Shown here piece after piece: positions 2,319 to 54,627 of a stretch of 64,000 bases of DNA. The stretch covers positions 8,618,001 to 8,682,000 of the forward strand of contig NC_043023.1 of assembly GCF_006345805.1 (NCBI RefSeq), given 5' to 3'. The position numbers and the translations under genes are program-made. Source of the DNA: Octopus sinensis (taxonomy: Eukaryota). The stretch's first letter is position 1, and each line of letters opens with the position of its first letter. The notes beneath the pieces were generated by a model. It made no database searches, was not told the origin of the DNA, and saw nothing but the letters and a program-made list of their open reading frames with translations.

Positions 2319-5300
2319 CTAGAAACATAATGAGAACAATTATATAAAATATTGATTTTTAAACACAAATAATTCTTGGCACTTAAAATTTTAAAATAAC
2401 AACAATTGTCATCAACTGGTTTTCCACACATGAAAAATATTACTGCATAAGAAGGAAGTATAAACAAGGCAATTTATATACAAAACCATTGTTACACAAA
2501 CTAGCTGTAAGTGATTGATTATCGGGGATATATTGTAAGATATTAGCAAATGCGGTTCAAGAATATTTTCCAGAGCAACTGGACAACTTTATATAAAATG
2601 ATGAACTGTTTAGTTCCATTTCAGTCAAAGGTTTTCACGGTTGTGTATATATTGTACGTGAGTCTTTAATGTACGTCGCCCTTTTAAGCCTAACCAGGCT
2701 CATGGATCTGGTTTTCCGGTTTCTGTGGCGTATGTGTTCCCCCTGCTGGACGGGACGCCAGTCCATCGCAGCGTTACTCAAGAAACAGGAAGAAAGAGCG
2801 AGAGAAAGTTGGGGCGAAAGAGTACAACAGGGGTCACCACCATCACCTGCCGGGTCCTCATGGAGTTTTTAGGTGTTTTCGTTCAATAAGAGTGAGAGAA
2901 AGTTGGGGCGAAAGAGTACAACAGGGGTCACCACCATCCCCTGCCGGGTCCTCATGGAGCTTTTAGGTATTTTCGTTCAATAAACACACACAACGCCCGG
3001 TCTGGGAATCGAAACCGCGATCTTCAGATCCTAACCACTGGGTCATTGCGCCTCCGTACGTGGGTCTATAGCTTTATGTATATTTATGCATTATCTTTGT
3101 GGTTTAATTTTCTACATTGCTAAATGAATATCTATCTGGCATATGTGTGTGTATATATATATATGGATATGTACGATATATTTCACACATGCCACTAAAA
3201 GCTACGAATTGTATTTCTGATCAGTTATCTTAAGAGCAGACGTGTTCTGGTGGGCGCCTTGGTGCCAGTCCCTTTGGAAGCTGTACTGTTTACTACAAGA
3301 CGTTCACTGATCATAAAATAAATTTATTTGCCTTTCAAATCATGCAGTTTGATTCGTCACCGGCATTAACCTCCCCATTCCATTTCGAAGATTCCTATTT
3401 CATTGTTTGTTTATAAATATCTCTCTTTTCGTACATTGATTCTATTTTACCCGATGGCTGGATATCATCCGAGATAAAGGATCGAATTCACGACAATGTA
3501 GATATCCTTCCTTTTCCTTCTACTTGTTTCAGTCATTTGACTGCGGCCATGCTGGAGCACCGCCTTTAATCGAGCAACTCGACCCCGGGACTTATTATTT
3601 TGTAAGCCCAGTACTTATTCTATCGGTCCCTTTTGCCGAACCGCTAAGTGACACACTAGCATCGGTTGTCAAGCAATGCTAGTGGGACAAATACAGACAC
3701 ACAAACATAGACGCACACATATATATATACATATATACGACGGGCTTCTTTCAGTTTCCGTCTATTGTCGGCCCGAGGCTATAGTAGAAGACACTTGCCC
3801 AAGGTGCCACGCACTGGGACTGAACCTGGAACCATGTGGTTGGTATGCAAGCTACTTACCACACAGCCACTCCTGCGCCTATATGTGAGTATAAATAATG
3901 TAACATATGATACACATTGTATTAGAGAGAAATAACCATGCTATTGAGACACACGTATAGAGATGTTTTAGGATATTCGTTCCCTAATGTTTACTACGCA
4001 CATACACACACACACACTTGCACACACACAGGCACACCCCCGCGCGCGCACACACACACACACACACACACGAAATAACAACAGTTTCGCTTCACCTCCA
4101 CGTATTTACATTTAACTCCTATCCACTGAGTGCTACCTTCTTTCGCTTTTCCTCGAGTGTATGCATGTATATAAAAATTGGCATGCTATATATATATATG
4201 TTTACTACGCACACACACACACACACACACGAAATAACTTGTTTTTTACCTTATATTAAACTTTTTAATACATTTTTATTGTTATATACATTTAATATAA
4301 TATATAAAAATAAATAAATAAATAAATAAAAAAATAAAAATAAAAATAAAATGAAAAAATAATAAAAAATATTTATATATATATATATATAAATTTATAA
4401 GTATAAATTAATAATTTAAAAATTTCTTTAAATTTTTATCTTTAAATTTAAATAATTTAAATTTGAATTTTATATTTTATATATTTTGTATATTATATTA
4501 ATTAATTTTATTTCTATGTTTTGGTTTATGTTTTTCACTGTTTGGTTTGCCTAATAGTGGTTTTATCTCTAATTTAAAATATATATATTTATACTGTAAA
4601 ATTAGATTTAATACTAAAACTAATTTTTCCCTGTAAGTTTGGATTTACTCCCTAATATTATTATTATATATATATATATGTATGTATGTATATATGTATA
4701 TATGTATATATATATATATATATATATATATATATATATATATATATATATGTGTGTGTGTGTGTGTGTGTATGTATGTATGTATGTATATATATATATA
4801 TATATATATGTATATATATATATATGTATATATATATATATATATATATATATATATATATATATATATGTATATATATATATATGTATATATGTATATA
4901 TATATATATATATATATATATATATATATATATATATATATATATATATATATATATATATATATATATATATATATACACATATGTTGATGAGAACGAT
5001 GAGGATGACAGCGAAATTGATGTTTATGATGAAGAGTTGTAACGTTGGTAGTGATGGAGTTTTGAGAGATGAAGATTATGATTATTTCCCTCATGACAGA
5101 ATTGGTTTTGTTGGTGGAAGGAATAAGAGACGCAAAATCACACTTACTTTTTATATCCTTCATAGCTTGCTTCCGATCTACTTTGTTTCGTTTACATAAG
5201 TACGGGTAGATGGCGTCTCTGGCATCTTTTTTGTATATACAGTAGCATAGGAAGATAAACATTCCTTGAAGGGGAGTGAATATAGCAAAAAGAAGGTGAA

Positions 5301-54627: not shown

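What the first reader, a model, noticed from the sequence alone, without database searches (positions are those of the whole stretch)
5148..54627. Adhesion GPCR with a LRR + three-finger (Ly6/uPAR) + HRM + GAIN ectodomain
The exons join in frame into LRRx3-LRRCT-LU-stalk-HRM-GAIN-7TM; several of them are absent from the ORF track. Established: LRR-bearing aGPCRs of the ADGRA type have LRR-Ig-HRM-GAIN, and LU domains normally occur in small secreted or GPI-anchored proteins (Ly6, Lynx1, CD59, uPAR, Sleepless/Quiver, snake toxins) or TGF-beta receptor ectodomains. I do not recall an LU domain in an aGPCR ectodomain. Here it sits where ADGRA has its Ig domain, while the TM and GAIN motifs look ADGRG-like. 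Inference: a lineage-specific chimeric receptor that tethers a toxin-fold module, possibly a channel or receptor modulator, to a cleavable G-protein signalling unit. This is the best candidate for an undescribed system in the window.
Basis: partly seen in the sequence, partly recalled or inferred. Interest (0 to 1): 0.88.

Follow-up and report, generated by a model that had tools for sequence, protein, structure and literature searches.

The report
Octopus LRR–LU adhesion GPCR, frameshifted copy
The interval holds an octopus adhesion G-protein-coupled receptor whose ectodomain does contain a three-finger (Ly6/uPAR) domain, but this receptor type is old, widespread among invertebrates and already annotated and published, and the copy in this window carries two frameshifts.

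Summary
The exons are real. They form one minus-strand gene, colinear (94-97% nt, introns included) with RefSeq 'adhesion G-protein coupled receptor G6-like' genes of Octopus sinensis and O. vulgaris. Architecture: LRR x3, LRRCT-like cap, LU domain, SEA-like alpha/beta domain, HRM, GAIN/GPS, 7TM.

The LU call is right. A profile of the octopus domain hits human LYPD1/Lynx2 in the PDB with all 12 Cys aligned. An AlphaFold model of the ortholog's domain gives only three-finger folds in Foldseek.

Three parts of the finding fail:
- The exons do not all join in frame. The first LU exon has one extra base compared with both orthologs, and canonical splicing reaches a stop in the second LU exon.
- The receptor is not a lineage-specific chimera. 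The same LRR-LU-...-GPS-7TM layout occurs in gastropods, bivalves, annelids, a brachiopod, a nemertean and echinoderms.
- It is not undescribed. LU-bearing GPCR-like receptors were reported in starfish (2024) and in molluscs and arthropods (2026). The octopus adhesion GPCR expansion with LRRs was reported in 2019.

The 7TM is ADGRG6-like. This is an ordinary family member, possibly a young pseudogene.

The parts
54556..54627 (-). LRR exon 1 (72 nt, phase 2/2)
   Evidence: Pfam LRR_8 E=7e-12 on LRR1+LRR2. tblastn to paralog LRRs. AG/GT borders. No blastn match in L001/L002.
52882..52953 (-). LRR exon 2 (72 nt)
   Evidence: 77% identical to P0001 residues 7-32. Pfam LRR_8. Splice sites.
50057..50125 (-). 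LRR exon 3 (69 nt), the last LRR before the cap. It is skipped in the O. sinensis RefSeq model.
   Evidence: 13 paralog hits, best E=0.04. Good acceptor and donor, in phase with its neighbours. Conserved in L001 and L002.
48380..48549 (-). LRRCT-like 4-Cys cap exon ([12 protein letters not shown]...YSQCK)
   Evidence: 89% identical to P0001 residues 57-112. Borders read. No Pfam LRRCT hit.
45124..45216 (-). LU exon 1 (finger 1). It has one extra base compared with both orthologs at the A6 run 45152-45147. Cys4 (TSCPGLL) is encoded in the +1 frame.
   Evidence: DNA alignment to O. sinensis and O. vulgaris. Translation. Profile positions 2-25 match in frame 1 and 22-92 in frame 2.
40797..40980 (-). 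LU exon 2 (fingers 2-3, ...CCRDNLCN). The acceptor ttgttacag at 40980 is the one that fits the ortholog protein models.
   Evidence: 97% identical to P0001 residues 141-204. Sequence. Profile hit at 2e-35.
37228..37334 (-). SEA-like 'stalk' exon 1
   Evidence: 92-97% identical to orthologs. Borders.
33257..33309 (-). SEA-like exon 2
   Evidence: 100% identical to orthologs. Borders.
31693..31850 (-). SEA-like exon 3
   Evidence: The AF2 model of the ortholog segment shows a beta-alpha-beta-beta-alpha-beta fold.
27940..28051 (-). HRM exon 1 (FCNEDTS...[11 protein letters not shown])
   Evidence: Pfam HRM hits 14 of 15 paralog segments, best E=5.4e-5.
27038..27186 (-). HRM exon 2 (C...[18 protein letters not shown])
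   Evidence: The junction TG+T gives Cys.. Pfam HRM.
25199..25430 (-). GAIN exon 1
24646..24817 (-). GAIN exon 2
21611..21757 (-). GAIN exon 3
18127..18261 (-). GAIN exon 4
17333..17473 (-). GPS exon with the cleavage motif CSCNHL|TSFAILM (Stachel start)
   Evidence: Pfam GPS E=1.9e-14. Sequence.
15885..15997 (-). TM1 exon
   Evidence: Pfam 7tm_2 covers profile positions 3-250 of 250, E=2e-37..
13004..13127 (-). TM2 exon
8450..8594 (-). TM3 exon
6234..6306 (-). TM4 exon ([19 protein letters not shown])
5148..5539 (-). TM5-TM7 and proximal tail exon
2267..2318 (-). The window lacks one A (CCAAGC becomes CCAGC at about 2314/2313). As assembled, the tail reads ...[18 protein letters not shown] (stop at 2265-2263) instead of the conserved ...[17 protein letters not shown].
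   Evidence: DNA alignment to both orthologs..

Best explanation
The interval holds most of one minus-strand gene. It is the ortholog of the octopus RefSeq genes named 'adhesion G-protein coupled receptor G6-like' (P0001 in O. sinensis, P0002 in O. vulgaris).

The encoded family is an adhesion GPCR with this ectodomain: (signal peptide and LRRNT, not found in the window), LRRs, an LRRCT-like cap, one 12-Cys Lynx2/LYPD1-type LU domain, a SEA-like alpha/beta domain, HRM, and GAIN with a canonical HL|T GPS. A 7TM of ADGRG6 type follows, then a short tail ending in a conserved T-A-E-T-[DN]-[LF] motif.

Inferred mechanism, from established adhesion GPCR biology:
- The LRR+LU head binds a partner on another cell or in the matrix.
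- The GAIN domain self-cleaves at HL|T.
- Force or ligand exposes the tethered agonist TSFAILM..., which activates the 7TM and a G protein.
- The LU domain is most simply a second protein-binding module of the adhesive head. Nothing suggests it acts as a toxin-like effector.

This layout is ancient. It occurs in molluscs, annelids, a brachiopod, a nemertean and echinoderms, and was expanded by tandem duplication in octopods.

The copy in this window carries two 1-nt frame-breaking indels compared with both orthologs, one in LU exon 1 and one in the last exon. I judge these more likely real (a young pseudogene or null allele, about 0.55) than assembly errors (about 0.35).
For: Gene model and orthology:
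- Per-exon tblastn identity is 73-100% to P0001 and P0002.
- The locus is colinear with both orthologous loci at 94-97% nt, introns included.
- All exons have AG/GT borders.

LU domain:
- A profile of 20 octopus copies hits LYPD1 (6zss) at E=3.7e-4 with all 12 Cys aligned. All 7 PDB hits at E<=10 are LU or three-finger proteins.
- The AF2 model has pLDDT 72.6. The Foldseek top 50 are all three-finger folds. The best is 6zss, TM 0.64/0.69, probability 1.0.
- Individual copies hit Pfam Toxin_TOLIP, Activin_recp, UPAR_LY6 and CD59.
- The profile retrieves canonical multi-UPAR_LY6 proteins from 1.84 billion representatives.

Other domains:
- HRM matches 14 of 15 segments.
- GPS E=1.9e-14 and 7tm_2 E=2e-37 on the window's own exons.
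- The best solved structures are ADGRG6, G2 and G4.

Age of the architecture:
- Nucella P0144 has LRR+LU+GPS+7tm_2 and aligns end to end with cephalopod P0031.
- 48 of 120 LRR 'ADGRG6-like' receptors from many phyla carry the LU between the LRRs and the GPS.

Transcripts:
- Full-length relatives are uninterrupted 3.5-kb ORFs on 4.2-4.4-kb contigs from three sequencing runs.

Lesions:
-.
- Window-specific 1-nt indels in 20.9 kb of mostly intronic three-way alignment number 11, against 10 in O. vulgaris and 32 in O. sinensis. The assembly is therefore not unusually indel-prone.
- The exon rate of 2 in 2.98 kb matches the neutral rate of about 0.5 per kb.
- dN/dS is 0.84-0.96 for all three species pairs.
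Against: - No RNA data exist for this locus or this species.
- The first lesion sits in an A6 homopolymer run (the second in an AA dinucleotide), and the rest of the 2.4-kb frame is open. Across the three orthologs there are no nonsense changes where 3.9-5.4 are expected under neutrality (P about 0.004-0.02). The gene was therefore under selection until recently, and the lesions could be assembly errors.
- The SEA assignment is weak. Pfam SEA hits 1 of 15 segments, and Foldseek returns only generic ferredoxin-like folds.
- The GAIN fold was not tested directly.
- The 5' end of the gene was not found in the window.
- The ligand and the G-protein coupling are unknown. The whole mechanism is inferred by homology.
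Confidence: 0.85

Rival explanations
1. The gene is intact and functional in the animal. The two 1-nt indels are assembly or consensus errors.
For: - One lesion lies in an A6 run and the other in an AA dinucleotide.
- All other exon indels compared with the orthologs are net multiples of three.
- There are no stop codons in the remaining 812 codons, and no nonsense changes across three lineages against 3.9-5.4 expected.
Against: - Window-specific 1-nt indels in introns are as rare as in the O. vulgaris assembly and three times rarer than in O. sinensis. Errors of this kind therefore look uncommon here.
- Two in one 3-kb coding sequence equals the neutral indel rate.
- AA to A is not a classic homopolymer error.
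- dN/dS is about 0.9.
Confidence: 0.35
2. One reading: a lineage-specific, previously undescribed chimeric receptor that tethers a toxin-fold module, acting as a channel or receptor modulator, to a cleavable GPCR.
For: - The LU fold is real, and its closest solved relative is Lynx2/LYPD1, a nicotinic-receptor modulator.
- LU proteins can act in cis on receptors, including a GPCR (bioRxiv 10.64898/2026.06.29.735401).
- Pfam does not annotate the domain in these proteins.
Against: - The architecture is shared by many phyla.
- It is published for starfish and for molluscs and arthropods (PMC11595613, PMC13719153).
- Orthologs are RefSeq-annotated.
- No evidence bears on channel modulation.
- The LU sits inside a conventional adhesive head.
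Confidence: 0.05
3. Two transcription units: a secreted LRR-LU(-SEA-HRM) protein and a separate HRM-GAIN-7TM receptor, fused only in gene models.
For: - The O. vulgaris annotation splits the LRR part into a separate upstream model.
- Several paralog models (P0059, P0063, P0072, P0089) run LRR-LU-SEA-HRM and then jump to the C-terminal ...TAETN[LF] exon without a 7TM.
Against: - The O. sinensis model joins the LRRs to the 7TM.
- Exon phases are compatible throughout.
- Uninterrupted cDNA-like contigs from three runs encode SP-LRRNT-LRR-LRRCT-LU-...-7TM in relatives.
- The same layout is found in about 48 proteins from other phyla.
- The short models are better read as truncated isoforms.
Confidence: 0.07

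Closest known systems
Invertebrate LRR-bearing 'ADGRG6-like' adhesion GPCRs. Examples: Octopus sinensis P0001, O. vulgaris P0002, Nucella lapillus KAL8620952.1 (P0144), and Haliotis, Pecten, Mytilus, Lingula, Patiria and Diadema proteins.
   Same: Same domain order end to end: LRR, cap, 12-Cys LU, alpha/beta domain, HRM, GAIN/GPS, 7TM. The window is the colinear ortholog of P0001 and P0002.
   Different: The window copy has two frameshifts and lacks a detectable 5' end. Octopods have dozens of paralogs, some with 2-3 tandem LU domains.
Vertebrate ADGRG6 (GPR126)
   Same: It is the nearest vertebrate 7TM. ADGRG6 is the top PDB match at 1.4e-50 and shows 43-44% identity over the GPS+7TM of the Nucella member. 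From my own knowledge of the published ADGRG6 ectodomain structure, both have SEA, HormR and GAIN before the 7TM, and both use a Stachel agonist.
   Different: ADGRG6 starts with CUB and pentraxin domains. This family has LRRs, a cap and an LU domain instead. No CUB or PTX hit was found. The SEA assignment is not secure here.
ADGRA2/ADGRA3 (GPR124/125)
   Same: LRR and LRRCT, then one small disulfide-rich or Ig-type module, then HormR, GAIN and 7TM. This layout is recalled from established knowledge.
   Different: ADGRA has an Ig domain where this family has LU plus a SEA-like domain. No ADGRA protein appeared among the best 120 matches to the 7TM in a length range that includes ADGRA2/3.
Human LYPD1/Lynx2 and LYPD6 (12-Cys LU domains)
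   Same: Same 12-Cys spacing, including the extra loop-3 disulfide and the C-terminal CCxxxLCN. LYPD1 is the best sequence match and the best fold match.
   Different: Those are small GPI-anchored single-domain proteins. Here the LU is an internal module of a 1000-1300-residue receptor. Sequence identity is about 21%.
Starfish LyAr2 and other 'GPCR-like' LU proteins (PMC11595613), and the LU+7TM proteins of molluscs and arthropods (PMC13719153)
   Same: A Lynx2-like LU domain in the N-terminal ectodomain of a 7TM receptor. The figure legend of the 2026 paper lists GPS and LRR among the domain types it draws, though which proteins carry them cannot be read because figures are not held. Asterias, Patiria and Diadema LRR 'ADGRG6-like' proteins carry the same LU.
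   Different: Octopus is not mentioned in the main text of those papers. I did not compare LyAr2 itself.

Membership tests
Adhesion GPCR (class B2) | Secretin-type 7TM domain | tested here: met
   Pfam 7tm_2 E=2.1e-37, profile positions 3-250 of 250, on the spliced window exons.
Adhesion GPCR (class B2) | GPS motif with the HL|T cleavage triad, followed by a TxFAxLM tethered agonist | tested here: met
   Pfam GPS E=1.9e-14. The sequence reads CSCNHL|TSFAILMDVYQN. Cleavage itself was not tested.
Adhesion GPCR (class B2) | Full GAIN domain fold upstream of the GPS | not tested
   About 270 residues lie between the HRM and the GPS. Vertebrate ADGRG2 alignments cover 64-75% of the query, which reaches beyond the 7TM. 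No fold test was run.
ADGRG subfamily, ADGRG6-like | 7TM closest to ADGRG6, G2 and G4 | tested here: met
   PDB ranking: G6 1.4e-50, G2 4e-50, G4 3e-47, then L3, E5 and D1. Vertebrate ADGRG6 is the first vertebrate group found with the Nucella member. No tree was built.
ADGRG6 proper | N-terminal CUB and pentraxin domains | tested here: not met
   No CUB or PTX hit in the window model or in paralogs. LRR, a cap and LU are present instead.
ADGRA (GPR124/125 type) | LRR-LRRCT-Ig-HormR ectodomain with an ADGRA-type 7TM | tested here: not met
   LRR and HRM are present, but there is no Ig domain (an LU and a SEA-like domain take its place). No ADGRA protein is among the best 120 7TM matches.
Ly6/uPAR (LU, three-finger) domain | Cys framework LxCxxC ... 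CCxxxLCN with at least 8 conserved Cys | tested here: met
   12 Cys are invariant or nearly invariant in 20 copies. All 12 align with those of LYPD1.
Ly6/uPAR (LU, three-finger) domain | Significant sequence similarity to known LU domains | tested here: met
   Profile against PDB: LYPD1 E=3.7e-4, ACVR1 0.0095, and only LU proteins listed. Pfam clan members are hit by 5+2+2+1+1 of 20 copies. The profile retrieves UPAR_LY6 proteins from 1.84 billion representatives.
Ly6/uPAR (LU, three-finger) domain | Three-finger beta fold | tested here: met
   Tested on an AF2 model of the O. sinensis ortholog's domain, not the window's copy (pLDDT 72.6). The Foldseek PDB top 50 are all three-finger folds.
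Ly6/uPAR (LU, three-finger) domain | Intact reading frame for the domain in this window | tested here: not met
   A +1 nt in LU exon 1 splits the domain between two frames.
SEA domain | Ferredoxin-like beta-alpha-beta-beta-alpha-beta sandwich with SEA sequence signature | tested here: inconclusive
   The AF2 model shows beta-alpha-beta-beta-alpha-beta, with pLDDT 72-91 across the domain (residues 1-100). Pfam SEA hits 1 of 15 segments, E=1.4e-5. Foldseek returns only generic ferredoxin-like folds. No G|SVVV motif is present.
HRM / HormR domain | Match to the hormone-receptor-domain profile with its Cys and Trp pattern | tested here: met
   Pfam HRM in 14 of 15 segments, best E=5.4e-5. P0001 scores 23.9 bits, just under the 26.2-bit cut-off. 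The pattern C..W..G..PC..ATRxC..GxW..C is visible.
LRRCT cap | Four-Cys C-terminal LRR cap | tested here: inconclusive
   The CxC...C...C pattern is present and is canonical (NPLECNC) in P0031. No Pfam LRRCT hit.

The most novel reading that the evidence does not exclude
The tip of LU finger 1 may be a diversifying specificity determinant in the octopod-expanded receptor repertoire. Of the mismatches in LU exon 1, about 7 against O. sinensis and 9 against O. vulgaris (out of 8 and 12 exon differences) fall in the roughly 19-nt stretch between Cys3 and Cys4, and the two orthologs differ from each other at 4 of 18 nt there, all non-synonymous (Y/H, L/S, E/Q). The flanking exon and intron are 96-100% identical. 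If so, LRR-LU adhesion GPCRs would form a rapidly evolving recognition set in arms and suckers, and frameshifted copies like this one would be part of birth-and-death turnover.
Probability: 0.15. Interest if true: 0.55.

Novelty: new member of a known kind. Interest (0 to 1): 0.22.

Why it matters
It matters little as a discovery. The gene is the ortholog of annotated octopus genes. It belongs to a receptor family found across invertebrate phyla, and the LU-on-GPCR architecture is already in the literature.

Three points are modestly useful:
- Pfam-based annotation misses the LU, HRM and SEA-like modules in these 'ADGRG6-like' proteins. Their full layout (LRR, cap, LU, alpha/beta domain, HRM, GAIN, 7TM) and its conservation from molluscs to echinoderms are stated clearly here.
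- Invertebrate relatives of vertebrate ADGRG6 carry LRR+LU where vertebrates carry CUB+PTX. This bears on how adhesion GPCR heads were swapped during evolution.
- The near-neutral dN/dS, the hypervariable finger-1 tip and the frameshifts fit the birth-and-death dynamics reported for the octopus expansion.

Tried and rejected
- Pfam on the spliced window model and on whole paralogs found only LRR, GPS and 7tm_2. The LU and HRM hits appeared only when the domains were scanned alone or as a profile.
- My first in-frame join used the acceptor at 40955. I rejected it after the orthologs showed the true acceptor at 40980 and the +1 nt.
- The HRM junction 27940 to 27177 gave a stop. The correct acceptor is 27186.
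- I first set the LRRCT donor two bases too far, which mis-framed LU exon 1. This was corrected to 48380.
- A profile of the SEA-like+HRM segment found nothing in PDB sequences. Foldseek on the two-domain model gave only generic ferredoxin-like folds and no SEA or HormR entry.
- The search for signal peptide, LRRNT or further LRR exons between 54.7 and 64 kb found nothing.
- ARAGORN found no tRNA-like sequence to explain the roughly 400-bp interspersed repeat.
- No supplementary files are held for the 2026 LU survey, so I could not check whether Octopus was among its 24 mollusc species.
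Full report
**What is in the window.**
The window is octopus genomic DNA. It is AT-rich and full of TA/CA microsatellites and retroelements. On the minus strand I mapped 22 exons, all with AG/GT borders.

A search with a first spliced model found octopus RefSeq proteins named 'adhesion G-protein coupled receptor G6-like' at 91% identity. 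They are P0001 (O. sinensis, 970 aa) and P0002 (O. vulgaris, 899 aa). Dozens of octopus paralogs followed at 45-65% identity.

Exon-by-exon tblastn gives 73-100% identity to P0001 and P0002. The window is colinear with both genomic loci at 94-97% nucleotide identity, introns and several transposons included. It is therefore the orthologous locus in a closely related octopus. Synonymous divergence (dS) is about 0.04-0.05 to each, similar to the distance between those two species.

**Gene structure.**
- Three LRR exons: 54627..54556, 52953..52882, 50125..50057.
- An LRRCT-like four-Cys cap: 48549..48380.
- Two LU exons: 45216..45124 and 40980..40797.
- Three exons of a roughly 105-residue 'stalk': 37334..37228, 33309..33257, 31850..31693.
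- Two HRM exons: 28051..27940 and 27186..27038.
- Five GAIN/GPS exons, from 25430 to 17333.
- Five 7TM exons, from 15997 to 5148.

Signal peptide and LRRNT exons exist in full-length relatives (P0031, P0133, P0144). I did not find them in the window, so the gene is 5'-incomplete here.

**The in-frame claim fails at one junction.**
Both orthologs read ...CSGM(T/I)CD-xxxMRSCPGLL | PLCQYG... across the two LU exons. The window has 19 nt where they have 18, at an A6 run (45152-45147).

The first three Cys are in one frame. Cys4 (TSCPGLL) and, through the ortholog-supported acceptor at 40980, the rest of the domain are in the +1 frame. The family profile matches positions 2-25 in one frame and 22-92 in the other.

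Spliced canonically, the message stops 28 codons into LU exon 2. An in-frame join is possible only through a weak internal acceptor at 40955. That join deletes Cys4 and Cys5 and would leave their disulfide partners unpaired.

A second lesion lies in the last exon. CCAAGC in both orthologs is CCAGC here. This replaces the conserved tail ...[17 protein letters not shown] with an unrelated 18 residues.

All other exon indels compared with the orthologs are net multiples of three.

**Are the lesions real?**
In 20.9 kb of three-way-aligned, mostly intronic sequence, the window has 11 lineage-specific 1-nt indels. O. vulgaris has 10 and O. sinensis has 32. The assembly is therefore not unusually indel-prone. 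Two frameshifts in 2.98 kb of exon also match the neutral rate of about 0.5 per kb.

dN/dS over 812 codons is 0.84-0.96 for all three pairs.

On the other side, no nonsense change has occurred in any of the three lineages, where 3.9-5.4 are expected under neutrality (P about 0.004-0.02). The gene was therefore kept open until recently.

I put a real, young inactivation or null allele at about 0.55 and assembly error at about 0.35. Only reads can settle it.

**The LU domain is real.**
The Cys-rich module occurs in 42 of the first 120 homologs, sometimes two or three times in tandem. An alignment of 20 copies has 12 Cys that are invariant or nearly invariant. It begins L-x-C-x-x-C and ends CC-x-x-x-L-C-N.

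A profile built from that alignment hits human LYPD1/Lynx2 (6zss) in PDB sequences at E=3.7e-4, with all 12 Cys aligned. The only other matches up to E=10 are ACVR1, Lynx1, SLURP1 and LYPD6.

Single copies hit Pfam Toxin_TOLIP (5 of 20, best 8.5e-5), Activin_recp, UPAR_LY6_2, UPAR_LY6 and CD59.

An AlphaFold model of the O. sinensis domain (pLDDT 72.6) returns only three-finger proteins in the Foldseek PDB top 50. The best is 6zss at TM 0.64/0.69.

Against 1.84 billion representatives, the profile finds 42 proteins at E<=0.001. They include canonical multi-UPAR_LY6 fish proteins.

**Other modules.**
- Pfam HRM matches 14 of 15 paralog segments, best at 5.4e-5, just below the curated cut-off.
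- The 'stalk' folds as beta-alpha-beta-beta-alpha-beta in AlphaFold. One paralog hits Pfam SEA at 1.4e-5. Foldseek gives only generic ferredoxin-like matches, and a PDB sequence profile search finds nothing. 'SEA-like' is therefore a reasonable label but not a proven one.
- GPS (1.9e-14) and 7tm_2 (2.1e-37, full length) are clear on the window's own exons.
- The GPS reads CSCNHL|TSFAILM, the canonical cleavage site and tethered-agonist start.
- The window's GPS+7TM is closest to ADGRG6, G2 and G4 among solved structures.

**The architecture is neither lineage-specific nor new.**
The LU profile search picked up a gastropod protein, Nucella lapillus KAL8620952.1 (P0144). It has LRR, LU, GPS and 7tm_2. 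It aligns end to end with a cephalopod protein, P0031 (32% over 1135 residues, E=3e-177).

Searching with the Nucella GPS+7TM region returned LRR-bearing 'ADGRG6-like', 'G2-like' and 'G4-like' receptors of 1000-1500 aa. They come from gastropods, bivalves, a chiton, annelids, Lingula, nemerteans, amphioxus, hemichordates and echinoderms. Vertebrate ADGRG6 followed as the first vertebrate group, at 43-44% identity.

The octopus LU profile matches 48 of those 120 proteins, always between the LRRs and the GPS. They include Owenia, Ridgeia, Lingula, Tubulanus, Patiria, Diadema, Asterias and Amphiura. The layout therefore predates the split between protostomes and ambulacrarians.

Relatives P0133 and P0031 are uninterrupted 3.5-kb ORFs on 4.2-4.4-kb contigs from three sequencing runs. 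Genomic genes of this family span more than 50 kb. I therefore infer that these contigs are transcripts linking all modules in one mRNA.

**Literature.**
- Ritschard et al. 2019 (PMC6408891) described the octopus-specific adhesion GPCR expansion. They found LRRs in 5 of 22 members and expression in axial nerve cord, suckers and skin, and did not mention Ly6.
- A 2024 paper reported starfish GPCR-like proteins with a Lynx2-like LU domain (PMC11595613).
- A 2026 survey reported LU-bearing 7TM proteins in molluscs and arthropods. Its figure legend includes GPS and LRR (PMC13719153).

**How it most likely works.**
This part is inferred from adhesion GPCR biology, not shown here. The LRR+LU head binds a cell-surface or matrix partner. 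The GAIN domain is self-cleaved at HL|T. Mechanical or ligand-induced exposure of TSFAILM... activates the ADGRG6-like 7TM. The conserved C-terminal T-x-[LF] tail may dock PDZ scaffolds.

The LU is most simply a protein-binding module of the head. A cis-modulatory role, as for the fly LU protein Bero on a GPCR, is possible but untested.

**Verdict.**
The in-frame claim fails at the LU junction, and the claims of lineage specificity and novelty are refuted. This is an ordinary, possibly inactivated, member of a known and widespread receptor family.

Noticed in passing
window 45141-45157 (minus strand, LU exon 1): The roughly 19 nt between Cys3 and Cys4 (the tip of finger 1) hold most of the exon's mismatches to each ortholog (about 7 of 8 differences to O. 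sinensis, about 9 of 12 to O. vulgaris). The two orthologs differ at 4 of 18 nt here, all non-synonymous: DYLEMR in O. sinensis, DHSQMR in O. vulgaris, DDAKNN(K) plus a frameshift here. The flanking exon and intron are 96-100% identical. This could be a mutational hot spot or diversifying selection.
   Followed up: partly
window about 25210-25240 (minus strand, GAIN exon 1): O. sinensis and O. vulgaris share a compensated -5/+2 nt change compared with the window. It turns ...[16 protein letters not shown] into ...EKILGGEPSKRIVNR. The window keeps the form seen in paralogs.
   Followed up: partly
window 2267-2318 and paralogs P0004, P0059, P0063, P0072, P0089: The C-terminal exon ends in a conserved T-A-E-T-[DN]-[LF] motif, which resembles a PDZ ligand. 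Several paralog models jump from ectodomain exons (LRR-LU-SEA-HRM...) straight to this exon with no 7TM. These may be secreted isoforms or annotation artefacts.
   Followed up: no
P0071, P0059, P0063, P0019 (paralogs): Some paralogs carry 2-3 tandem LU domains. P0019 carries a duplicated SEA-like+HRM unit.
   Followed up: no
window 56095-59256 (minus strand): A non-LTR retrotransposon with ORFs of 574, 266 and 141 aa. Pfam finds an Exo_endo_phos endonuclease and RVT_1. It lies upstream of the first LRR exon found.
   Followed up: partly
window 8800-11352 (plus strand): An RT-bearing LINE fragment (RVT_1, E=6e-20) in the TM2-TM3 intron. It is present at the orthologous site in O. sinensis and absent in O. 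vulgaris.
   Followed up: partly
window 40994-44778: A roughly 3.8-kb GC-richer insertion in the intron between the two LU exons. It is shared with O. sinensis and absent from O. vulgaris. Its ORFs have no Pfam hit.
   Followed up: partly
window 3517-3886, 19368-19771, 25721-26127, 27283-27703, 36723-37126, 47682-48091 and others: A roughly 400-bp interspersed repeat in both orientations, with many copies also in the orthologous loci at 80-93% identity. ARAGORN finds no tRNA-like part. It is probably an octopus SINE.
   Followed up: partly
window 60040-62667 (plus strand): Three consecutive ORFs of 147, 117 and 450 aa. The last is Asn/Ser-rich. None has a Pfam hit. This may be an unclassified mobile element.
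   Followed up: partly
L001 10357-13235 compared with window 52199-53131: O. sinensis has a tandem duplication of the segment carrying LRR exon 2, giving two [13 protein letters not shown] repeats in P0001. The window has one copy.
   Followed up: no
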